Shown piece by piece: positions 18,027 to 64,000 of a stretch of DNA of 64,000 nt. The position numbers and the translations under genes were made by a program. The first letter of the stretch is position 1, and each line of letters starts with the position of its first letter. The notes beneath the pieces were generated by a model that was not told the origin of the DNA, searched no databases, and saw nothing but the letters and a program-made list of their open reading frames with translations. The stretch covers positions 285,794 to 349,793 of IMG/VR virus record IMGVR_UViG_3300018080_000098. One strand, written 5' to 3'.

Positions 18027-18323
18027 CTAACTACTCTGCGAGTCTTCTTCTATTTTACAGTTTGACCTTCGGAAGTAGAGTTCGAGCACGGTGCCGACCG
18101 CGGCCACCGCGAGCACCGTAAAAAACCAACCTTCGGGGACAAACCAGGGATTGGTCGGGGTGAGCTTCGCGCACACCGCGAGAAACAGGAGGAACGCGAG
18201 GAGAACTCCGGCAGCGTACGCGGTAATGGCAACGCAAAGAAATCGAAGAACCGCTATCAAGGATAACAATCCATAGGGCAGATGGCGTAGACTTCCAGAC
18301 CGTCGCAGATACCGTTGCCGCAA
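18027..18323 (-). CDS. Small multi-TM membrane protein (start uncertain)
   Basis: Three hydrophobic segments; overlaps end of upstream gene. Confidence 0.45.
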   Translation of the reverse strand: MRQRYLRRSGSLRHLPYGLLSLIAVLRFLCVAITAYAAGVLLAFLLFLAVCAKLTPTNPWFVPEGWFFTVLAVAAVGTVLELYFRRSNCKIEEDSQSS

Positions 18324-19741
18324 GTAGAGAGGCAGTCAGGCGGACAATTGTTCATCGTTTCTCCCATATCGCACGAACCGTCACCGCAATTCTGAGCACA
18401 ATCGAGGCTACAGTTGCTATACGCTTCCCCATAACCAACTGCACAGATACCATCACCGCAGCTTCCGGGGCAATCCTGCTGGCAGGTCACCCAGGTTTCT
18501 GCGCCATCGCAAAGATTGTTTCCGCAGACACCAGCACCGCAATCAGCTGGGCAGCTACCCGCGTCCTCTCCATGAATAGCCAGGCACAATCCGTCACCGC
18601 AACTGGTGCCACAATCCATAGGACAGCTAATAGGGCCTTCGCTGCCTTCGCAAGTGCCGTTGCCGCAGACGTTGGGGGGACAGTCGAAGGAGCAGTTTAG
18701 AGAATTCTCCCCGAGAGAGATCTCGCAGGTACCGTTGCCACACAGCCCGGGTCCGCAATCCTGTGGGCAGCTTTGTACATCCTCAGTGGGTTCGCACAAG
18801 CTGTTACCGCAAACGTAGGTGGTTGGGCAGTCCTGCGGGCACGATATGGCGTTGTCGGCAAAGTTGGGATCGCAGACACCGTCACCGCAGATGGGCCACG
18901 TACAGTCTTCTCGGCACGCATCCGGTGTGGTGTCGCTATTGAAGACGCCGTTGTCGCACGCCTCGCCAGTTTCTTGAATGCCGTTACCGCAGACGGGGCT
19001 AGTGGGCTCGGTTTCGCAGACGGCGTTACAACCGTCCCCGTCGACGGTGTTTCCGTCGTCGCACTCTTCCCCAGTGTCCTGGACGCCGTCGCCACAGTAG
19101 GCCACCAAGCAATTCAGCCGACAAGCGTCGGGCTCGGTATCGGAGTTGTCGACTCCGTCGTCGCACTCTTCACCCGGTTCTTGAACTCCGTTACCGCAGA
19201 AGGGGTCGGTAGGTTCGGTTTCGCAGATGGAGCTACACCCGTCCCCGTCGACGGTGTTACCGTCGTCGCACTCTTCCCCGGTATCTTGGACACCGTCCCC
19301 GCAGAAGGGGACCTCGCAATCGAGGCGACATGCGTCGGGTTGCGAGTTGGAGTTGCTGGAGCCGTCGTCGCAGGCTTCCCCGACCTCTTGGATACCGTTG
19401 CCGCAGACGGGGTCCGCCTCCGTTTCGCAGGTACCGGAGCAACCGTCTCCGCTGGTGCTGTTGCCGTCGTCGCACTCTTCTCCGGTGTCCTGCACACCGT
19501 CTCCGCAGTAGAAGACGGTGCAGTCGAGGCGACACGCGTCCGGTTCCGTATCGGAGTTAGCCGCGCCGTCGTCGCACTCCTCGCCCCAGTTCTGAACTCC
19601 GTCCCCGCACTCTCCTGGGTTGTCGTTCTGGTTTATGTTGTTGGCGTTGGTGCCAGCGTCGTTACCGTTCGTGAAGGTGTCTCCACTCGTACCACAGGCA
19701 GCCAGCATCAGTACCATTAGCAGTGCAAAAATTCGTTCCAT
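18257..19741 (-). CDS. Myxobacterial-type cysteine-rich repeat lipoprotein (DUF4215/myxo_disulf_rpt-like)
   Basis: Start moved to ATG 19741 (GGAGG RBS); lipobox LAA/C; repeated CGDGVQDTGEECDDGN...DGC and CGNGxC...E...SCPxDC units. Confidence 0.85.
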   Translation of the reverse strand: MERIFALLMVLMLAACGTSGDTFTNGNDAGTNANNINQNDNPGECGDGVQNWGEECDDGAANSDTEPDACRLDCTVFYCGDGVQDTGEECDDGNSTSGDGCSGTCETEADPVCGNGIQEVGEACDDGSSNSNSQPDACRLDCEVPFCGDGVQDTGEECDDGNTVDGDGCSSICETEPTDPFCGNGVQEPGEECDDGVDNSDTEPDACRLNCLVAYCGDGVQDTGEECDDGNTVDGDGCNAVCETEPTSPVCGNGIQETGEACDNGVFNSDTTPDACREDCTWPICGDGVCDPNFADNAISCPQDCPTTYVCGNSLCEPTEDVQSCPQDCGPGLCGNGTCEISLGENSLNCSFDCPPNVCGNGTCEGSEGPISCPMDCGTSCGDGLCLAIHGEDAGSCPADCGAGVCGNNLCDGAETWVTCQQDCPGSCGDGICAVGYGEAYSNCSLDCAQNCGDGSCDMGETMNNCPPDCLSTCGNGICDGLEVYAICPMDCYP

Positions 19742-19797
19742 GGTAAAATCCTCCCAAAAAATCAATGTCCCCAGTATTGACGATGTCAAGAAAGATG

Positions 19798-20292
19798 TCA
19801 AGAAAATTGTGGTGAGGTTGCACGAGTAATGAGCCAAAGAAGCATATACACTTCCTCGCTTCTATCGAGTTCCACGGAGAATTGTTTCTTGTTGTCAGCG
19901 TACGCACCGAAAACGCGCTCATCCGGAAAACCCTCGAAGTATACACCATGAATGGATTCTTCCGCATATTTCCCGAAAAGATCGTGAAAATCCACGTCGA
20001 TTTCCACTGGTGAGTCAACCGACACTTTGTAGTCGTGAAAATTGTCGCGAATAGTGAAAACGACCCCTCCTGGGGTACGTAGTTCCACGACGGGTAGTCT
20101 AATAGACTTAGAAGTGTGGGTGCTGATTACTATAGGCTTCAGTGTCTTATACACCTTATAATCTGCGCCTGGGGGACAAACTGCCCACGTCAAACGGTGG
20201 AAGAAGTCGAATTGCACGTGTGCAGCTTTCTTCCACACCATTTCATCTGCAGGAACATTCTCCTTGCACCACTCTTCGAGCGTAATGGTCAT
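19798..20292 (-). CDS. Hypothetical phage protein
   Basis: Start moved to ATG 20292 (MTITLEEW); GGAGG RBS supplied by the pentamer tract. Confidence 0.7.
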   Translation of the reverse strand: MTITLEEWCKENVPADEMVWKKAAHVQFDFFHRLTWAVCPPGADYKVYKTLKPIVISTHTSKSIRLPVVELRTPGGVVFTIRDNFHDYKVSVDSPVEIDVDFHDLFGKYAEESIHGVYFEGFPDERVFGAYADNKKQFSVELDRSEEVYMLLWLITRATSPQFS

Positions 20293-20297
20293 CGTAA

Positions 20298-20377
20298 CCT
20301 CCTTGGATTGCCTTACCAGGCGTGGCCAAGCCAAGCCATACCGTGCTCCACGGTACCAAGCACCACGCAGCCACGCC
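20298..20377 (-). repeat. 5-nt periodic (N)GY-NN tract T1, candidate guide RNA directly 3' of the RAMP-like gene
   Basis: Minus strand: GGCgt GGCtg CGTgg TGCtt GGTac CGTgg AGCac GGTat GGCtt GGCtt GGCca CGCct GGTaa GGCaa TCCaa GGAgg; first 14 units all NGY. Confidence 0.9.
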
Positions 20378-20386
20378 CGGTAAAAT

Positions 20387-20974
20387 CTACGCCACCGCTT
20401 CAGCGTCGTCCTCGACCACCTCCCATCCAGTCACCTGGAACTTCCCGAAGGTTCCCTTCTTCGTAGGCCGGTAGTCGCCCAGCCCCACACGCTTCCCCGC
20501 AGCCTCCACGATGTCGTGAATGAGGTTTACATCGAACACATCCTCGTCCACCTCGAGCGTGAACTTCAGCTTCCACTTGTCCAGGCGTGCCCGGTGGCGC
20601 AGCACCGCACCCTTCGTGGAGGGATTCACCACCCGGCGGCTGTCCACCTCGAACTTCTTCGTGCCAAACGAGCACGTGAGCTCCTCTACCGTCACGCCTC
20701 CCGTGAGCAGCGTCCCACTCGTTGTGGTTACCTTGTTCTTTCCCAGCTTGAAGAACTTCCCGGCCTCGATGAGACACGCCAGGATGTTGGTCCCCGGGAA
20801 GTGGAGCATTCCCTTGTTGTCCATGTAGGCGCTCCGTTCCGCTTCCTCCCGTGGCGCGAGCTTCTTCTTGCGCGTCGGGCGGTGCCCCGCCGAGAGCTCC
20901 ATCTCCGCCGCGTCGGTGAACCGGTTCATGAGTAGGGGGGTTTTTCCTTCGATTTGCACTTTCACAATGGCCAT
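20387..20974 (-). CDS. Solitary Cas7/RAMP-like RNA-binding protein (Vipr-like)
   Basis: RAMP-like motifs: VQIEGKTPLLM, FPGTNILACL, and C-terminal G-rich loop GLGDYRPTKKGTFGKF; no other cas gene in window; pentamer tract immediately downstream. Confidence 0.75.
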   Translation of the reverse strand: MAIVKVQIEGKTPLLMNRFTDAAEMELSAGHRPTRKKKLAPREEAERSAYMDNKGMLHFPGTNILACLIEAGKFFKLGKNKVTTTSGTLLTGGVTVEELTCSFGTKKFEVDSRRVVNPSTKGAVLRHRARLDKWKLKFTLEVDEDVFDVNLIHDIVEAAGKRVGLGDYRPTKKGTFGKFQVTGWEVVEDDAEAVA

Positions 20975-21076
20975 GGCGTCTGTTCCTTTCTGTTCTGTGA
21001 TCTATTCCTCGCCTAACAATACCCCGTCCCAATGGCCACTAATCAAAGGGGACGGGCTTCGCGCAACATTGCGCGC

Positions 21077-21286
21077 CTAATCAATGCTTCTACTTCGCTG
21101 CCACGCGAAACAGCCCTCCGCGCCCACGCACCCCAGCCACAACACCCACACCCACCAGGGCAGCACAAACAATGCCAGGTAATCGTTGAACGCTACCGCT
21201 AACGCTACCAGGAAGAGCACCGGTCCCATTCCTAGCACGGCGACAGTAACGGTAAACACCCTAAATATTTTTATCAAGAAGGTCAC
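21077..21286 (-). CDS. Small membrane protein
   Basis: 69 aa, almost entirely hydrophobic. Confidence 0.55.
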   Translation of the reverse strand: MTFLIKIFRVFTVTVAVLGMGPVLFLVALAVAFNDYLALFVLPWWVWVLWLGCVGAEGCFAWQRSRSID

Positions 21287-22067
21287 CTGATGCCCAGAAA
21301 CCTGCGTCCTTCAAGATAGCTTCACACTCCTGCCGATAGCCCTTCTTGAGCTCGATTACGTTCACACCCGGGTGGCGCATCAACCACAAACCGAACACGG
21401 AATTGGTAGCCACAATAAACTGCACTTTCCCAGAGCACCCCTCACGCTGCACCCACTGCCACAACGGGAGTTTGGTAGGCCAGTCCAGAACAGCGTCAGG
21501 CTCGTCGAGAAGAACTGTTGGAGGCCCCTTTTCAATAACAGGCTCGAGCAGCTCTTGCGCCATCTTGATTCTGTGCGCCCATACGTCGTTCACGTTGTTC
21601 GGGGTAATTCTCCAATTGATGCTTTCTTCCTGCGAGCGCTGTACTAGACGCATAAAGCGTCCTGCAACCTGCTGCCCTGCAGATCCCTTGTCGGTTGCAT
21701 TTATGACACCCTCCATCCCAAAATCCCAATCGAATCCACCTCCCACTAGCCCCACTTGTACAGAAGGGTCAAAGTACATCACAGACTTTCCATCAGACTT
21801 GATGGACATGTTCTTCCTGGGGGTATTTCGGAAACCGAACCCAAAGAGCTCATCAATTGACTGCTGGGTAACTGTAGAAGTTCCTCCCTGTTCGCAGTGC
21901 GTGATCCGCGCCAGCGCTTTTATTACCGTGGACTTCCCCGACCCATTCGGGCCCCAGAGCACGTTGACACACGGCTCAAAGTTGAACGTACGCCGTTTAG
22001 GGAACGGTTTCGACCACCACGTAATGGGTGGCTTGTCTCGATTTATTACCTTCAGCTGCTCGATCAT
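21261..22067 (-). CDS. ABC/SMC-like ATPase (AAA_21-like)
   Basis: Walker A GPNGSGKS, degenerate signature SAGQQ, Walker B LLDEPD. Confidence 0.8.
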   Translation of the reverse strand: MIEQLKVINRDKPPITWWSKPFPKRRTFNFEPCVNVLWGPNGSGKSTVIKALARITHCEQGGTSTVTQQSIDELFGFGFRNTPRKNMSIKSDGKSVMYFDPSVQVGLVGGGFDWDFGMEGVINATDKGSAGQQVAGRFMRLVQRSQEESINWRITPNNVNDVWAHRIKMAQELLEPVIEKGPPTVLLDEPDAVLDWPTKLPLWQWVQREGCSGKVQFIVATNSVFGLWLMRHPGVNVIELKKGYRQECEAILKDAGFWASGDLLDKNI

Positions 22068-22876
22068 CAGTCCACCGCACAGTAGTATCCAGGCATCGGA
22101 CGCTGCAGGTTGCCCTTTTTAAGCTGACGCTGCAGGTACTTCGAGATGGCGTTGTTGGTGGGAATCGCTTTGCGGGGAACGCTCTTGTTTGCCTCCAAAA
22201 GCGCTCGCAAGTCCGTCACCGCGAGCATCTCGTACTCCGCTAGCAGCTTGTCCGCTGGGTCCATCCAAGCTGTCCGAGGCTTACCACCACGGACATTTTT
22301 CTTCCGCTTGGACGCGTTCTTACCGTTGCCCTTCTTCGCCCTAGCAACAGCTTTCTTCTCTACCTTTTTGTTCATGAACGGAGACTTGGCTCCATCCCGC
22401 CATCGGTAAGCGCCCTTCGCTACTTTGACAAGCTTCTTCTCCTTGGCAAGCTTGTCGATGTAGTACCACACCAACCCGTAAGTGATGTCATTGTACATGG
22501 GCGACAGCTCCATGGTCAGATAGGTGACAATGTCCACTACCGAGTGCGCTTTTTTGGTACTGAAGAACTTGCGCGCAATGGCTTTCTTCGCGTCCTTAAA
22601 AGAATGCTCAGGAGGAGATTGAGGACGTTTGACCGCTGCCTTCATCTTTTCTACCCGTTGCTTCCCCTCCTCGAGCTCCTCCATGTCTTTCAGCTTTTCC
22701 AGTGCTTGTGTTACTGCAGTGTACACGCCACCTGTTTTTACAAGCTCGCGCTGAGCCTGCTCAAGTATGCGCTTCTGCTCCACCATCAGTTTCTGGAGCT
22801 CCTCACTCTGCTTGATGAGGAGAGCCCTCGTGTGGACGATCGCTTCCGGTTCTGCTGCCTTCTTTTTTCGAGACAT
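22067..22876 (-). CDS. Coiled-coil protein with two winged-helix-like DNA-binding segments
   Basis: N-terminal coiled coil; LAKEKKLVKVAKGAYRW and LKKGNLQRPMPGYY resemble wHTH wings. Confidence 0.6.
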   Translation of the reverse strand: MSRKKKAAEPEAIVHTRALLIKQSEELQKLMVEQKRILEQAQRELVKTGGVYTAVTQALEKLKDMEELEEGKQRVEKMKAAVKRPQSPPEHSFKDAKKAIARKFFSTKKAHSVVDIVTYLTMELSPMYNDITYGLVWYYIDKLAKEKKLVKVAKGAYRWRDGAKSPFMNKKVEKKAVARAKKGNGKNASKRKKNVRGGKPRTAWMDPADKLLAEYEMLAVTDLRALLEANKSVPRKAIPTNNAISKYLQRQLKKGNLQRPMPGYYCAVD

Positions 22877-23011: not shown

Positions 23012-24169
23012 CTACCGTTTCGCTACACGTTCCGTCTTTTCCCATACACGCCACCGAAGATGAACGCCGTCCACCATCTCCATCCGAGCCCAGTGTACCC
23101 GCTTTTTCGGACCTTCCTTCCAACCGGTGACCCACTCCTTCTCCGCTTTCTTGATCCACGTCGGCAGCGTCGGAGACATCGGACCCGTTTCTCCCTTCAG
23201 CCACACCAGGCACTGGTCTGCCGGGATGTGCTTCTGCACAGCCGTCGTCCAGAAGGAATACTCGGTGCAGCGAGTCAAGAAACGAAGCTGCTCGATGAAA
23301 CCGGTGAGACGGCTCTTCAACGACCGCGCAGCCTTGAAGTCCTCCTGCGTAGCCTCGTAAGGCGTGTACTCTCCCTCGAGCTCCACACCGTCCACTTTCG
23401 CCTCGAAGGCCCACACCTTGATAGCCTCGTCCTCACCTACCTTCTCACTCTTCGGCCACTCCGGCGGCTTAATGTCGAGCTCCTCCCGCAACCGCTTCAC
23501 CTCCGCGCGCAAAAATCGAAGCTCGTCCTCCAACCGCGAAATAGCAGCCTTCGCCACCAGATAGTACACCCCGTAGAAAGAAGGCCACCGCATCGGGTGT
23601 ACCAGGTACTGGAACCGCAACTCGTTCGCCGCACCGCTCAGCTTCTCGAACACGTCGTTCGGCAAGCCCGTCGGCATGATGTCCACCGATTCCCAACCCT
23701 TGTACCACTTCCCCGTCACGTCCTGCAGCAGCATCGCCCGGTAAGCTCCCACCTCAGCATCCGTCGTCCCGTCTTCCTTGGTTTTCGCTTGGATAACATT
23801 CATATCCTCAATACGAATACCGAATGAGAATGCTGCTTTGTTGGAGGTGAGCCCACTCAAACGACCGTGCCGGTTCTCCTTCGACGTGACCCACTCACCC
23901 TCACGTTTCGTGGACGCGCGGCGCGATTGGTACTTTGGCAGATTCACTACCACCCGGTTCTCTACCAGCGGCGTGAGAAAAGCTGCCAGGTCCAGGTCGG
24001 TTACCGGAACACCATCCGGGTCTACCCAGGCTACTCCGGGCTTCCGCTTGTCGAGGTTGTACCCCCACGCATCCAGTAGCCGTTTGCAGAGGACGCGCAT
24101 GTCCTCCTGTCTGTTCTTGACGATGTCCAGGTCCCGAGCGTCGATTGTTTTTCTTTCTGACGTTACCAT
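23012..24169 (-). CDS. Hypothetical phage protein
   Basis: Start moved to ATG 24169 (MVTSERK; AGGAG RBS); the ORF-track extension runs through pentamer tracts. Confidence 0.75.
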   Translation of the reverse strand: MVTSERKTIDARDLDIVKNRQEDMRVLCKRLLDAWGYNLDKRKPGVAWVDPDGVPVTDLDLAAFLTPLVENRVVVNLPKYQSRRASTKREGEWVTSKENRHGRLSGLTSNKAAFSFGIRIEDMNVIQAKTKEDGTTDAEVGAYRAMLLQDVTGKWYKGWESVDIMPTGLPNDVFEKLSGAANELRFQYLVHPMRWPSFYGVYYLVAKAAISRLEDELRFLRAEVKRLREELDIKPPEWPKSEKVGEDEAIKVWAFEAKVDGVELEGEYTPYEATQEDFKAARSLKSRLTGFIEQLRFLTRCTEYSFWTTAVQKHIPADQCLVWLKGETGPMSPTLPTWIKKAEKEWVTGWKEGPKKRVHWARMEMVDGVHLRWRVWEKTERVAKR

Positions 24170-24189: not shown

Positions 24190-24249
24190 TATCCTTGCAA
24201 TGCCTTAGTGGGCATAGGCTCGCTTTGCCACTCCCAGCCTGAGCACACT
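24190..24249 (-). repeat. (N)GY-NN pentamer tract T3
   Basis: AGTgt GCTca GGCtg GGAgt GGCaa AGCga GCCta TGCcc ACTaa GGCat TGCaa GGAta. Confidence 0.7.
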
Positions 24250-24272
24250 TCGTATTACTATCTTTACAAGAT

Positions 24273-24377
24273 GAACCTTGGACTACGATACGCTGCCACG
24301 CATTAGACGCCATCGCAATATATTGCGCTACGATGCCTTGCACTACTTGGCGTCACCACACTCTGCAACACTCAACC
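24273..24377 (-). repeat. (N)GY-NN pentamer tract T4 (21 units, possibly two fused tracts)
   Basis: GGTtg AGTgt TGCag AGTgt GGTga CGCca AGTag TGCaa GGCat CGTag CGCaa TATat TGCga TGGcg TCTaa TGCgt GGCag CGTat CGTag TCCaa GGTtc. Confidence 0.8.
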
Positions 24378-24775: not shown

Positions 24776-24855
24776 ACTCCTTGCAGCGCTTTACTCCACT
24801 TCACACTAGCTAGCCACACACCGCCGAGCTCCACAGTACTTCGCCGGGCGACGCC
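24776..24855 (-). repeat. (N)GY-NN pentamer tract T5
   Basis: GGCgt CGCcc GGCga AGTac TGTgg AGCtc GGCgg TGTgt GGCta GCTag TGTga AGTgg AGTaa AGCgc TGCaa GGAgt. Confidence 0.85.
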
Positions 24856-32049: not shown

Positions 32050-32114
32050 TTGCCTTGCATTACCAAACAGTGCCTAGCCCAACTCGACGTGAGCACGCCG
32101 TACTGAGCGCGGCA
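32050..32114 (-). repeat. (N)GY-NN pentamer tract T8
   Basis: TGCcg CGCtc AGTac GGCgt GCTca CGTcg AGTtg GGCta GGCac TGTtt GGTaa TGCaa GGCaa. Confidence 0.85.
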
Positions 32115-33369: not shown

Positions 33370-33439
33370 TTACCTAACCTTGCATCACGTGGGCGTGCTG
33401 TGCGCAACCGCGCATGAGCTTGCAGCACTCGGCCGCTCC
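33370..33439 (-). repeat. (N)GY-NN pentamer tract T9
   Basis: GGAgc GGCcg AGTgc TGCaa GCTca TGCgc GGTtg CGCac AGCac GCCca CGTga TGCaa GGTta GGTaa. Confidence 0.8.
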
Positions 33440-33731: not shown

Positions 33732-33796
33732 TCTCCTTGCGTTGCCTTACTGCACAGCTCCCTACCTTTCCAGACCAGGCGTTGCTCCGCTCTGCA
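33732..33796 (-). repeat. (N)GY-NN pentamer tract T10
   Basis: TGCag AGCgg AGCaa CGCct GGTct GGAaa GGTag GGAgc TGTgc AGTaa GGCaa CGCaa GGAga. Confidence 0.8.
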
Positions 33797-34002: not shown

Positions 34003-34057
34003 TCGCCTTTCCTTGCACCGCCCGGCCCGACTGTGCTACGCCAAGCCACCTATAGCC
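34003..34057 (-). repeat. (N)GY-NN pentamer tract T11
   Basis: GGCta TAGgt GGCtt GGCgt AGCac AGTcg GGCcg GGCgg TGCaa GGAaa GGCga. Confidence 0.75.
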
Positions 34058-37288: not shown

Positions 37289-37348
37289 TTTCCTTGCGTT
37301 GCCCTACCGGGCCTTACTTCGCCCCGCTGGGCTTTGCCTGGCAGTGGA
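37289..37348 (-). repeat. (N)GY-NN pentamer tract T16 (overlaps 3' end of upstream CDS)
   Basis: TCCac TGCca GGCaa AGCcc AGCgg GGCga AGTaa GGCcc GGTag GGCaa CGCaa GGAaa. Confidence 0.8.
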
Positions 37349-38343: not shown

Positions 38344-38388
38344 GCTCCTCGCGTTGCCGCACCCAGCGTTGCATAACCGTTCAACGCC
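38344..38388 (-). repeat. (N)GY-NN pentamer tract T18
   Basis: GGCgt TGAac GGTta TGCaa CGCtg GGTgc GGCaa CGCga GGAgc. Confidence 0.7.
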
Positions 38389-38391
38389 TAG

Positions 38392-38640
38392 CTAAGCATG
38401 TCGCCAATCAGGCTGCAACTCCTCGAACGCTTTACACTCCCAGGGACCATCCCGCCTCGGCACGTCCTTTAGGTATTTTACAGGGCCCTCTCGCCGCTCT
38501 CGAAACAATCGAGCTCGAGGTTCACCTTCTTCCCGACCGAACCACGCTTGCTGCTCTTGCAGATGACAATACTCGAAGGTCTTGTCACCGCGAGGACCAC
38601 CCCAGTGAACACAGCGTCGACACAAGCTATTCGCCATCAT
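38392..38640 (-). CDS. Small Cys-containing protein
   Basis: AAGGAGG RBS; CRRCVHW...C...C. Confidence 0.6.
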   Translation of the reverse strand: MMANSLCRRCVHWGGPRGDKTFEYCHLQEQQAWFGREEGEPRARLFRERREGPVKYLKDVPRRDGPWECKAFEELQPDWRHA

Positions 38641-42315: not shown

Positions 42316-42400
42316 ACTCCTCGCTTTACCTTGCAGTGCAGTACACCGTCATGCCTCACCACACCCAGCGCCACGTCACCTTACGCCACCTCGCTTCGCA
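42316..42400 (-). repeat. (N)GY-NN pentamer tract T19
   Basis: TGCga AGCga GGTgg CGTaa GGTga CGTgg CGCtg GGTgt GGTga GGCat GACgg TGTac TGCac TGCaa GGTaa AGCga GGAgt. Confidence 0.85.
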
Positions 42401-47795: not shown

Positions 47796-47922
47796 GTGTG
47801 TGACTCCGTGTGCGTTGTCCGTCCGACAAAAACAAGATAACCATGCAGCTTGACGGCGTCAAGTTTTTCCGCAAAATATTTTTGCGCGCCTGGTAGGGTT
47901 GTCGGTTTAACCAATAGACCAG

Positions 47923-47995
47923 GGTGCATGACGGAACTCGAATCCGCAACCTCCGGGACCACAACCCGGCGCTCTACCGATTGAGCTACATGCAC
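47923..47995 (-). tRNA. trnH: tRNA-His (GTG)
   Basis: Cloverleaf: acceptor GTGCATG/CATGCAC, anticodon arm CCGGG-TTGTGGT-CCCGG, T loop TTCGAGT; discriminator C; CCA and G-1 not encoded. Confidence 0.85.
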
Positions 47996-47996
47996 A

Positions 47997-48084
47997 TGGC
48001 AGGGGTAGGATTCGAACCTACGGTGGTACTCGTGGAGTGACTAGATTTACAGTCTAGCGCCTTCAACCTCTCGGCCACCCTGCC
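47997..48084 (-). tRNA. trnY: tRNA-Tyr (GTA)
   Basis: GGCAGGG acceptor, CTAGA-CTGTAAA-TCTAG anticodon arm, long variable arm, GGTTCGAATCC; CCA not encoded. Confidence 0.9.
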
Positions 48085-63601: not shown

Positions 63602-64000
63602 CTACCCACACTCAGGACACTCATCACCGTGCGTCAGAAGCGCCCCGCACTCAGCGCAAGCCGGAACTTCGATTACGTGATCCTTCAGCCACTGAGCCGC
63701 TAGGTCGATAAAGGCTTTGTACTCCTTCAGCTCCTCTTCAGAGTAGCCGTGAGACTCCCCGATCTCCCGGTAGTTCTTCAGCCAATACTCCACCGTATGT
63801 ACCTCACACCCCACGGCAATCTTGTCCGCGGCGGCTGTAGTCAGGAAATACCGAGAGCCCTGGATTTGCAGCGGCGAAATTTCCCAAGCACTCCCGTACA
63901 CCCGAGCATCCCCGTACACCCGAGCATCCCCGTACACCCGAGCATCCCCGTACACCCGAGCATCCCCGTACACCCGAGCATCCCCGTACACCCGAGCATC
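63602..64000 (-). CDS. Hexapeptide (VYGDAR) repeat protein, 5' end outside window
   Basis: 18-bp tandem repeat CCCGTACACCCGAGCATC (x6) at ~63893-64000 encodes VYGDAR; left-handed beta-helix-like; C-terminal CAEC...CPEC. Confidence 0.75.
   Translation of the reverse strand, partial: DARVYGDARVYGDARVYGDARVYGDARVYGDARVYGSAWEISPLQIQGSRYFLTTAAADKIAVGCEVHTVEYWLKNYREIGESHGYSEEELKEYKAFIDLAAQWLKDHVIEVPACAECGALLTHGDECPECG

What the first reader, a model, noticed from the sequence alone, without database searches (positions are those of the whole stretch)
20298..20974. Solitary Cas7/RAMP-like gene with an adjacent GGY-NN pentamer tract: a VIPR-type RNA-guided system
Seen: a 195-aa protein with RAMP hallmarks (EGKTPLLM, FPGTNILACL, G-rich loop GLGDYRPTKKGTFGKF). 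Nine nt after its stop, 14 consecutive 5-nt units begin; all are NGY+NN, 9 are GGY, and the dinucleotides vary. With G at about 0.3 and Y at about 0.5, 14 in a row is of order 1e-12 by chance. No cas1/2, nuclease or CRISPR array is in the window. Established: Cas7-family proteins polymerise on guide RNA with fixed periodicity. From memory, unverified here, recently described VIPR systems pair a viral RAMP protein with GGY/NN RNAs whose NN dinucleotides specify a gapped DNA target (two bases paired, one skipped). Inference: this locus is such a system. The T1 code would be GT-TG-GG-TT-AC-GG-AC-AT-TT-TT-CA-CT, acting as a programmable DNA-binding repressor against competing elements or for self-regulation.
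Basis: partly seen in the sequence, partly recalled or inferred. Interest (0 to 1): 0.95.

Follow-up and report, generated by a model that had tools for sequence, protein, structure and literature searches.

The report
VIPR RNA-guided system in jumbo phage
A small Cas7-like gene followed by fourteen five-base repeat units, in a 350-kb phage contig, is a real member of the recently described VIPR family of RNA-guided DNA binders, and its guide code matches a tiny, very conserved bacterial gene.

Summary
A 195-aa ORF (20387-20974, minus strand) is followed, 9 nt after its stop, by 14 consecutive NGY-NN pentamers (20308-20377), 9 of them GGY.

A profile of the protein family matches the solved SUSP1 Vipr protein over its full length (E 2.4e-15). 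The predicted fold is Cas7/Csm3-like. In 60 of 82 related phage loci the same kind of tract starts just after the vipr stop.

VIPR is already published (three 2026 preprints), so this is a new member of a known kind.

New points:
- The window lies in a 349,793-bp viral contig.
- It carries nine further tracts, all on the same strand. Each sits between a stop codon and the ribosome-binding site of the next gene.
- This clade has Asn where SUSP1 has the His that reads the first G, and that repeat position is relaxed.
- T1 folds into a hairpin that one relative keeps through compensatory changes.
- Read by the published one-base-skip rule, T1 units 1-10 match 30 database sites exactly. Twenty-eight of these lie in one 36-aa basic bacterial gene, with the skipped base at the codon wobble position.

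The target call is suggestive and not calibrated. RNA expression, protein binding and repression are untested.

The parts
20387..20974 (-). vipr gene: 195-aa minimal RAMP (Cas7-like) protein
   Evidence: Sequence and profile match to PDB 36pp_D 'SUSP1 Vipr protein'. phrog_4652 at E 2e-21 and no Pfam family at its threshold. AF2 model with Foldseek hits to Csm3/Cas7 and to viral RAMP proteins.
20308..20377 (-). T1: 14 NGY-NN pentamers, the candidate vrRNA repeat region. Units 1-12 are variable; units 13-14 (GGTAA GGCAA) are the clade's constant 3' end.
   Evidence: A same-position tract occurs in 60 of 82 related loci. Orthologous tracts are present in L088/L089 and L004.
20298..20307 (-). TCCAAGGAGG: the clade's short tail motif (TCCAAGG), overlapping the Shine-Dalgarno of the next gene
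   Evidence: CCAAGG lies within 12 nt of the tract end in 19% of 207 family tracts against 0.5% background. AAGG sits at the junction in 45% against 3.9%.
20311..20385 (-). Long imperfect hairpin spanning the 9-nt leader and T1 units 1-13
   Evidence: MFE -46.7 kcal/mol, z -3.9 to -4.3. z is about -2.4 when the NGY scaffold is preserved. L088 shows two compensatory pair changes.
19798..20292 (-). Downstream 164-aa gene, whose ribosome-binding site abuts T1. Probably not a dedicated accessory gene.
   Evidence: 60% identical gene in the same place in L088. Homologs also occur without vipr. No family hit. The single-sequence model is poor, pLDDT 42.5.
21261..22067 (-). 268-aa P-loop ATPase (AAA_23/ABC/SMC head). 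Candidate accessory gene by synteny only.
   Evidence: Conserved directly upstream of vipr in L004, L085 and L086.
22067..22876 (-). 269-aa protein with two weak AbiEi-like winged-helix hits. Candidate DNA-binding accessory gene by synteny only.
   Evidence: Partial homolog upstream of the ATPase in L004.
24283..24377 (-). T2: 11 perfect units, then 8 more in register (3 of them broken), ending at TCCAAGG. A further degenerate tract lies at about 24195-24259. The downstream gene really starts at ATG 24169.
   Evidence: A tract occurs at the same position in L004.
24781..24855 (-). T3: 15 units (14 conforming), from 3 nt after a stop codon to the SD of the next gene
32050..32114 (-). T4: 13 units (12 conforming), upstream of a 373-aa Fe-S/radical-SAM-like gene
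33370..33434 (-). T5: 13 units (11 conforming)
33737..33796 (-). T6: 12 units (10 conforming)
34013..34047 (-). T7: 7 units
37294..37343 (-). T8: 10 perfect units
38349..38398 (-). T9: 10 units (9 conforming)
42321..42400 (-). T10: 16 units (15 conforming)

Best explanation
The locus is a VIPR system (Viral Interference Programmable Repeat) carried by a very large uncultured phage.

Shown here:
- The 195-aa protein is a homolog of the structurally solved SUSP1 Vipr protein, with a Cas7-like fold.
- T1 is a pentamer tract of the kind found next to vipr genes throughout this clade.

Inferred from the published mechanism:
- T1 is transcribed together with vipr, because there are only 9 nt between the stop codon and the tract and no promoter or terminator lies between them.
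- One Vipr protomer binds each 5-nt unit and holds the G-Y scaffold.
- The NN dinucleotides are presented to base-pair with double-stranded DNA that carries the same dinucleotides separated by one skipped base.
- The bound filament blocks transcription.

Inferred from database matches: the target of T1 is codons 8-17 (KKIVPVKPHT) of a 36-aa, very basic, very conserved bacterial protein gene, with every skipped base at a codon wobble position. On this reading the phage would silence a cellular gene, presumably in its host.

The nine other tracts (T2-T10) are most simply further guides embedded in the spacers of the phage's own operons.
For: Protein:
- phmmer against PDB: E 2.2e-4. Family profile: E 2.4e-15 over positions 2-183 of the profile and 2-188 of the 202-aa chain.
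- SUSP1 RNA contacts D177/W178/R179 and R138 (preprint 720927) align with D167/Y168/R169 and R128. R169 and R128 are invariant and D167 nearly invariant in 33 family members; Y168 is not among the conserved columns.
- Fold hits to Csm3/Cas7 (E 1.5e-7, probability 1.0, TM about 0.5) and to viral RAMP proteins (TM 0.72).

Tract:
- 14 of 14 units conform to NGY.
- 60 of 82 related loci have such a tract within 300 nt after the vipr stop on the same strand, mostly within 25 nt. Across these loci there are 268 tracts on the vipr strand and 154 on the opposite strand.
- 71% of family tracts end in GYAA, against 5.9% background. T1 ends in GGTAA GGCAA TCCAAGG.
- Positive control: the Pseudomonas phage LESphi2 homolog (28% identity) has three canonical GGY-NN tracts beside it.

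Constraint on the code:
- Against the L088 ortholog (Vipr 83% identical), units 1-10 carry 7 substitutions, all at scaffold positions and none in the 20 NN bases (hypergeometric p about 0.02).
- Against L004, all 5 substitutions are in the scaffold and none in the 14 NN bases (p about 0.06). Both counts are my own, made.

Target:
- The pattern built from units 1-10 gave 0 hits in IMG/VR, 21 in metagenome contigs and 9 in GTDB genomes.
- 28 of the 30 hits lie in one homologous 36-aa gene, on the opposite strand, with the skip at the wobble position.
- The matched block is the most invariant part of that protein.
- No self-target in the window, as the preprints report for natural systems.
Against: - No RNA data exist. 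Expression, processing and Vipr binding of T1 are all inferred.
- T1 is a stable hairpin that one relative keeps through compensatory changes. This competes with filament assembly and could by itself explain why the NN bases are conserved.
- The closest relatives L002/L003 and L085-L087 (74-81% identity) have no tract after vipr.
- No pseudoknot-type tail like that of SUSP1 is evident, and no dedicated vap gene was identified.
- SUSP1 H17, which reads the first G, is Asn here.
- The target significance is not calibrated. About one hit per 6e11 bases is expected by chance, and one chance hit inside a conserved coding block drags in all its homologs. My estimate for such a cluster arising by chance is 1e-2 to 1e-3.
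- Units 11-14 do not match the target.
- The host is unknown, so it is unknown whether it carries the small gene.
- T2, T3, T8 and T10 gave no exact hit in IMG/VR.
Confidence: 0.75

Rival explanations
1. The tracts act in cis on the phage's own messages. Vipr polymerises on the NGY-NN spacer of a polycistronic mRNA and covers or exposes the adjacent ribosome-binding site, or else triggers cleavage. Vipr would then be a translational or mRNA-stability regulator of about ten phage genes, instead of or in addition to a DNA-targeting effector.
For: - All ten window tracts and all four tracts in L004 lie between a stop codon and the start of the next co-directional gene. Gaps to the start codon are 3-23 nt, and the last units run into AAGGAG.
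- In relatives, a tract often ends at the ribosome-binding site of vipr itself (L006, L007, L021, L042, L067), which would give autoregulation.
- T1 abuts the SD of the 164-aa gene.
Against: - In many family members the tracts form arrays with no ORF after them, and the tail there is GGRTTTTTAAT rather than an SD.
- TCCAAGG also occurs between two tracts (L007), so it is a tail motif and not necessarily an SD.
- The published Vipr mechanism is DNA binding.
- The NN conservation and the codon-phased database match of T1 are not predicted by a purely cis role.
Confidence: 0.13
2. T1 is mainly a structured 3'-UTR element, such as a terminator-like or RNase-processed hairpin that ends or stabilises the vipr message. 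Its pentamer periodicity would be a relic or a by-product. The working guides, if any, would be the other tracts.
For: - MFE -46.7 kcal/mol, with no shuffle folding as well.
- Two compensatory pair changes in L088.
- Relatives that lack T1 have a short hairpin at the same position, in L085 followed by a T-run.
- A GC step repeating every 5 nt is self-complementary, so a hairpin can carry the period on both arms.
Against: - No T-run follows the T1 hairpin, and the terminator scan finds nothing there.
- 18% of 148 family tracts fold this well against mononucleotide shuffles. With the scaffold preserved, T1 is only z -2.4, p about 0.02.
- The clade's 3' end motif is intact.
- 14 of 14 units conform, including the loop and the bulged parts that the hairpin does not constrain.
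Confidence: 0.08
3. The protein is a stray CRISPR Cas7/Csm3 subunit, or a decoy of one acting as an anti-CRISPR, and is unrelated to the tract.
For: The best solved-structure fold matches are type III and type VII Cas7-family subunits.
Against: - Its only sequence-level match in the PDB is the SUSP1 Vipr protein.
- No CRISPR array is present in the window.
- PADLOC cas and defence models do not hit it.
- Gene-tract adjacency is conserved in 60 of 82 loci.
Confidence: 0.02

Closest known systems
SUSP1 / Pseudomonas fulva VIPR systems (type II; preprints 10.64898/2026.04.26.720920 and ...720927)
   Same: - Phage-encoded RAMP protein of about 200 aa, homologous over its full length.
- The thumb Arg and most of the G-loop RNA contacts are conserved.
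- Pentamer-repeat RNA gene directly beside vipr, on the same strand, with 9-16 units.
- No cas genes or CRISPR array.
- No self-target.
- The predicted target is a coding sequence with the skipped base at the wobble position.
   Different: - The scaffold is N-G-Y rather than G-G-Y: the first position is G in only 41-45% of units. This matches the YNNNG variant the authors mention.
- The His that reads G1 is Asn here.
- The tail is a short GCAA-GGYAA-TCCAAGG motif, not a pseudoknot of about 40 nt.
- No vap1-like gene.
- There is one tract beside vipr and nine scattered over 22 kb, instead of a local array.
- The predicted target is a cellular gene, not a satellite or prophage.
Solo (orphan) vrRNAs of phages and satellites (preprint 10.64898/2026.10.15.759431)
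   Same: vrRNA-like tracts located away from any vipr gene.
   Different: There the solo vrRNAs sit in elements that lack vipr and hijack another element's protein. Here the dispersed tracts are on the same genome and the same strand as vipr, inside operon spacers.
Class 1 CRISPR backbone subunits (Cas7/Csm3/Cmr4, type III and type VII)
   Same: RRM core, glycine-rich loop and thumb hairpin. The fold match has probability 1.0. One protomer binds per fixed-length RNA segment (established knowledge).
   Different: - 11-16% sequence identity and TM only about 0.5.
- 5-nt rather than 6-nt periodicity.
- No Cas5, Cas10, Cas6, Cas1 or Cas2 and no repeat-spacer array.
- The guide information is discontinuous.
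Pseudomonas phage vB_Pae_LESphi2 gene P21_9 (OQ594955.1), annotated as hypothetical protein
   Same: 28% identical over the full length. Three GGY-NN tracts lie beside it, each ending GGCAA/GGCGA followed by GGG.
   Different: The scaffold is canonical GGY, the tracts lie upstream of the gene, and the locus is next to the cI/cro switch of a temperate phage.

Membership tests
VIPR (Vipr protein + vrRNA) | Vipr protein: minimal RAMP homologous to the characterised Vipr proteins | tested here: met
   phmmer E 2.2e-4 and family-profile E 2.4e-15 against PDB 36pp_D 'SUSP1 Vipr protein', full length.
VIPR (Vipr protein + vrRNA) | RAMP fold with RRM core, glycine-rich loop and thumb | tested here: met
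   AF2 model pLDDT 84.9, pTM 0.80. More than 100 Foldseek hits at E<=1e-3; the 50 best listed are all chains of type III (Csm/Cmr) or type VII CRISPR effector complexes. The G-loop is GLGDYRPTKKGTFG. The beta-hairpin at residues 109-131 carries the invariant R128.
VIPR (Vipr protein + vrRNA) | Residues that hold the GGY scaffold in SUSP1 (H17, R138, D177, W178, R179) | tested here: inconclusive
   R138, D177 and R179 align with identical residues (R128, D167, R169). W178 aligns with Tyr and H17 with Asn (preprint 720927). The Asn goes together with a relaxed first repeat position; that link is my inference.
VIPR (Vipr protein + vrRNA) | Adjacent tandem pentamer RNA gene, GGY/NN or related consensus, 9-16 units | tested here: met
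   14 units, 9 GGY and 5 NGY, starting 9 nt after the stop codon. Gene-tract adjacency is conserved in 60 of 82 relatives.
VIPR (Vipr protein + vrRNA) | Invariable 3' tail after the repeats | tested here: inconclusive
   A short clade-wide end motif is present (GYAA units, then TCCAAGG or GGRTTTTTAAT). No pseudoknot-like structure was found, and the tail overlaps an SD.
VIPR (Vipr protein + vrRNA) | vipr-accessory (vap) gene | tested here: inconclusive
   The downstream 164-aa gene also occurs without vipr. The upstream ATPase and the wHTH protein are syntenic only in the closest relatives. In the wider clade vipr sits in a recombination/replication module.
VIPR (Vipr protein + vrRNA) | Viral location, no CRISPR array | tested here: met
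   The window lies in IMGVR_UViG_3300018080_000098, 349,793 bp. No array was found. Not every ORF was screened for cas genes.
VIPR (Vipr protein + vrRNA) | vrRNA is expressed and co-purifies with Vipr | not testable with these tools
   No transcriptome or biochemistry is available for this uncultured phage.
VIPR (Vipr protein + vrRNA) | Natural targets follow the one-base-skip rule, with no self-target | tested here: inconclusive
   T1 units 1-10 gave 30 exact hits, 28 of them in one 36-aa gene with the skip at the wobble position. No self-target. Other skip lengths and shuffled controls could not be run on those collections. Four other guides had no hit in IMG/VR.
CRISPR-Cas class 1 effector | Repeat-spacer array plus Cas5 / large subunit / adaptation genes | tested here: not met
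   No array. No PADLOC hit for the protein or for its neighbours beyond a generic P-loop.

The most novel reading that the evidence does not exclude
A jumbo phage uses VIPR against its host rather than against rival mobile elements. The vipr-adjacent guide T1 would silence a 36-aa, highly basic, cross-phylum conserved cellular gene by reading only the first two bases of ten invariant codons. The rest of the guide set would be embedded in the 5' untranslated spacers of the phage's own operons, so that guide production and translation of the flanking genes are coupled through Vipr binding. The conserved T1 hairpin would act as a switch between these two states.
Probability: 0.25. Interest if true: 0.75.

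Novelty: new member of a known kind. Interest (0 to 1): 0.5.

Why it matters
VIPR was described only in 2026 and has been characterised in two closely related clades of enterobacterial and Pseudomonas phages. This locus adds four things.

- The family, recognisable by sequence, extends into a 350-kb uncultured phage and into a large clade (238 relatives in IMG/VR). That clade has a relaxed N-G-Y scaffold and an Asn in place of the G1-reading His, a natural experiment on how the scaffold is read.
- Guides can be scattered through operon spacers rather than arrayed.
- It gives a concrete, testable target prediction in a cellular gene of unknown function. If that holds, the known role of VIPR would widen from phage-versus-phage conflict to host takeover, and a conserved small protein would be flagged as important during infection.
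- A 195-aa protein with a 14-unit guide is also another compact candidate for programmable DNA binding.

Tried and rejected
- **Pfam, NCBIfam and PADLOC on the protein:** no family at threshold. PHROGs gives only an unnamed family.
- **Self-targeting:** scanned with skip lengths 0-3. Nothing beyond shuffled guides, apart from the trivial self-match at skip 3.
- **Targeting rules tested locally:** 198 family guides against about 0.9 Mb of vipr loci under five rules (NN with skip 0, 1 or 2; NNN with skip 0 or 1). No rule beats shuffled guides, so the rule for this clade could not be tested locally.
- **Other guides hitting the small gene:** none besides the T1 orthologs.
- **Exact gapped patterns for T1, T2, T3, T8 and T10 in IMG/VR:** 0 hits each.
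- **The small gene's GKKIVPVKPH coding pattern in IMG/VR:** 0 hits.
- **Identity of the 36-aa protein:** no Pfam or NCBIfam family, no paper, only 'hypothetical protein' names, and variable chromosomal neighbours.
- **The 164-aa gene as a vap:** rejected as a dedicated partner. Its single-sequence model is too poor to search with.
- **Hammerhead or other known RNAs near the tracts:** none.
- **Promoter or terminator next to T1:** none.
- **Supplementary tables of the discovery preprint, to assign a VIPR type:** not held, so the type (I-VII) is not assigned.
- **Heuristic count of spacers with tracts:** 5 of 9, but too dependent on crude ORF calls to rely on.
- **Host:** not identified. PHROGs on ten large ORFs gave almost nothing.
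Full report
**1. The observation**

On the minus strand an ORF runs from 20974 to the TAG stop at 20389-20387 and encodes 195 aa. Nine bases later, 14 consecutive 5-nt units begin (20377 down to 20308). Every unit is N-G-Y-N-N and nine start with GG. The dinucleotide code is GT TG GG TT AC GG AC AT TT TT CA CT AA AA. The tract is followed by TCCAAGGAGG and the ATG of the next gene at 20292.

NGY occurs at 13.7% of positions. A run of 14 is expected about 5e-8 times in the window, and the longest run in 300 Markov simulations was 9. Because the tract is also a hairpin (section 5), its two arms are not fully independent, so the real figure is less extreme. The context below removes any doubt that the periodicity is real.

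**2. The protein is a Vipr**

- Pfam has nothing at threshold. PHROGs gives an unnamed family at E 2e-21.
- Against all PDB sequences the only hit is chain 36pp_D, 'SUSP1 Vipr protein' (E 2.2e-4).
- A profile of 33 homologs (38-81% identical to the query) matches the same chain at E 2.4e-15, over positions 2-183 of the profile and 2-188 of the 202-residue chain.
- The structural preprint (10.64898/2026.04.26.720927) names the residues that hold the GGY scaffold. D177, W178 and R179 in the glycine-rich loop align with D167, Y168 and R169 here. R138 in the thumb aligns with R128. R128 and R169 are invariant and D167 nearly invariant in the family; Y168 is not among the conserved columns.
- H17, which hydrogen-bonds the first G, aligns with a nearly invariant Asn17.
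- The AlphaFold model (pLDDT 84.9, pTM 0.80) hits Csm3/Cas7 subunits of type III and type VII complexes (E 1.5e-7 and up, probability 1.0, TM about 0.5). It also hits viral proteins, one of them annotated as a RAMP superfamily protein.

**3. The tract belongs to a class that travels with this protein**

The window's own contig is IMGVR_UViG_3300018080_000098, 349,793 bp.

IMG/VR holds 238 relatives. I fetched 80 loci from there, one of them a second copy of the window's own contig, and further ones from metagenome assemblies.

- In 60 of 82 loci a tract with the same N-G-Y-N-N period starts within 300 nt after the vipr stop on the same strand, usually within 25 nt. Arrays of 2-19 tracts are common.
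- Across 207 family tracts the first unit position, which my scan does not constrain, is G in 45% and T in 28%.
- The last two units contain GYAA in 71% of tracts, against 5.9% background. The tract is followed by TCCAAGG or GGRTTTTTAAT. T1 ends GGTAA GGCAA TCCAAGG.
- As a positive control, the 28%-identical homolog in Pseudomonas phage LESphi2 has three canonical GGY-NN tracts beside it.
- The discovery preprint (10.64898/2026.04.26.720920) defines vrRNAs as 9-16 YNNGG repeats and notes variant consensus forms, including YNNNG. That variant is what this clade shows.

**4. More tracts in the window**

With a score that tolerates one broken unit, the minus strand has ten tracts (T1-T10, 20.3-42.4 kb) against 0.32 expected. 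The plus strand has one weak tract.

- Each lies between a stop codon and the start of the next co-directional gene. The last units (mostly GCAA) run into a Shine-Dalgarno sequence.
- The T2 spacer really holds two or three tracts, and the gene after it starts at 24169.
- The syntenic relative L004 (Vipr 75% identical) has four tracts in the same kind of position. One precedes an RtcB RNA ligase gene.
- This scattered, spacer-embedded layout is not described in the three preprints as far as their held text shows.

**5. T1 is also a hairpin**

- The leader plus T1 folds at -46.7 kcal/mol, z -3.9, with no shuffle folding as well. The other nine tracts are not unusual, with z from -2.1 to +1.1.
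- When the G-Y scaffold is preserved, T1 is z about -2.4, p about 0.02. Against mononucleotide shuffles, 18% of family tracts fold comparably well, because a GC step every 5 nt is self-complementary.
- The ortholog L088 changes GG to CA in unit 2 and CC to TG in unit 11, which restores both base pairs.
- Relatives without T1 carry a short hairpin at the same site.
- I cannot explain why a guide that must be single-stranded inside a filament keeps this stem. Possible roles are message 3'-end protection, processing, or a switch.

**6. Substitution pattern**

These are my own counts, made on the sequences printed.

- Window against L088, units 1-10: 7 differences, all at scaffold positions and none in the 20 NN bases (hypergeometric p about 0.02). 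Units 11-12 differ in NN.
- Window against L004, units 3-9: 5 differences, all in the scaffold (p about 0.06).

The code is therefore more constrained than the scaffold. This fits a guide that tracks a conserved target, although the hairpin may contribute to the constraint.

**7. Target prediction**

The preprints establish that each NN pairs with target DNA and one target base is skipped per unit, and that natural targets are coding sequences with the skip at the wobble position.

- I turned the ortholog-conserved units 1-10 into a 29-nt pattern with 20 specified bases.
- It gave 0 hits in IMG/VR, 21 in metagenome contigs and 9 in GTDB species genomes. The genome hits are four Algoriphagus, Arthrospiribacter, Leptolyngbya PCC 6406, and Balneolaceae, Tenuifilaceae and Chloroflexota MAGs.
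- A uniform model expects about one hit in the 596 Gb of genomes.
- Twenty-eight of the 30 hits fall in one homologous gene on the opposite strand, with the skip at the wobble position. It encodes a 36-aa protein with consensus MAKTxxGKKIVPVKPHTRKxGGKxVKVxxHRRSTPN.
- T1 covers K8-T17, the most invariant block. The first ten residues of each hit are fixed by the pattern itself. The homology shows in the flanks and in the matching small ORF.
- The gene has no family, name or literature. It has variable chromosomal neighbours and host GC from 34% to 68%. It is absent from IMG/VR even with a looser pattern, and absent from the window and the vipr loci.
- The vrRNA is antisense to the gene's mRNA, so RNA pairing is not excluded.

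Limits:
- One chance hit inside a conserved coding block brings all its homologs with it.
- Units 11-14 do not match.
- The host is unknown.
- Four other guides found nothing in IMG/VR.
- No guide has a self-target in the window.

**8. Accessory genes**

- The downstream 164-aa gene is conserved after T1 in L088, but its homologs also occur without vipr.
- A P-loop ATPase and a protein with two AbiEi-like winged-helix hits lie upstream in the closest relatives only.
- In the wider clade, vipr sits among a PD-(D/E)XK exonuclease, a Sak4-like ATPase, a DUF669 SSB-like protein, a helicase and RusA.
- No vap can be named.

**9. Verdict**

- Shown: homology to a solved Vipr protein, the RAMP fold, a vrRNA-type tract in the conserved position with the clade's end motif, and nine further tracts.
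- Inferred: co-transcription, filament formation, gapped DNA recognition and repression.
- Suggestive only: the small-gene target.

Because VIPR is published and its authors already list variant scaffolds and many types, this is a new member of a known kind. Several features are worth a follow-up: the scattered guides in operon spacers, the Asn17 with a relaxed first position, the conserved hairpin, and a cellular predicted target.

Noticed in passing
window 63893-64000: A perfect 18-nt tandem repeat (CCCGTACACCCGAGCATC), six copies, running off the end of the window.
   Followed up: no
window 18257-19837 (-): A 526-aa cysteine-rich repeat protein (CGDG..EECDDGN units). Seven DNA repeats of about 102-105 nt lie inside the gene. 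Relatives score weakly for DUF4215.
   Followed up: partly
window 47922-48084 (-): Adjacent tRNA-His (GTG) and tRNA-Tyr (GTA) genes on the phage contig.
   Followed up: no
L091-L120, e.g. L116:3582-3610: A 36-aa, very basic protein family with 18 invariant residues. It is found in Bacteroidota, Chloroflexota, Cyanobacteria and many metagenomes, has no Pfam or NCBIfam model and no literature, and is absent from IMG/VR.
   Followed up: partly
L121 (OQ594955.1, Pseudomonas phage vB_Pae_LESphi2) 2094-3085: The 'hypothetical protein' P21_9 of this cystic-fibrosis-isolate prophage is a Vipr homolog. Three canonical GGY-NN tracts lie in the 470-nt spacer upstream, close to cI and cro. The record does not annotate it as VIPR.
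   Followed up: partly
L045 5331-9244 (IMGVR_UViG_3300027857_000036): Nineteen tracts within 4 kb around vipr in a 42-kb AT-rich phage, each ending in GTAA GGTTT followed by TTAATAG-like tails.
   Followed up: no
L004 341-1736: In the syntenic relative an RtcB RNA ligase gene is flanked by tracts on both sides. An RNA-repair or ligation enzyme next to guide-like RNAs may be relevant to their processing.
   Followed up: no
window 20975-21060 (-): A GC-rich stem-loop (CCCGTCCCC ... GGGACGGGG) lies just upstream of vipr, after the 69-aa membrane-like ORF. It could end the preceding transcript, which would give vipr-T1 its own start. The simple scans report no promoter there.
   Followed up: no
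L116 4955-7261: One Algoriphagus copy of the small gene lies next to a fused E2/E1(ThiF)/JAB protein, a ubiquitin-like conjugation module of the kind seen in defence islands. Other copies have unrelated neighbours.
   Followed up: no
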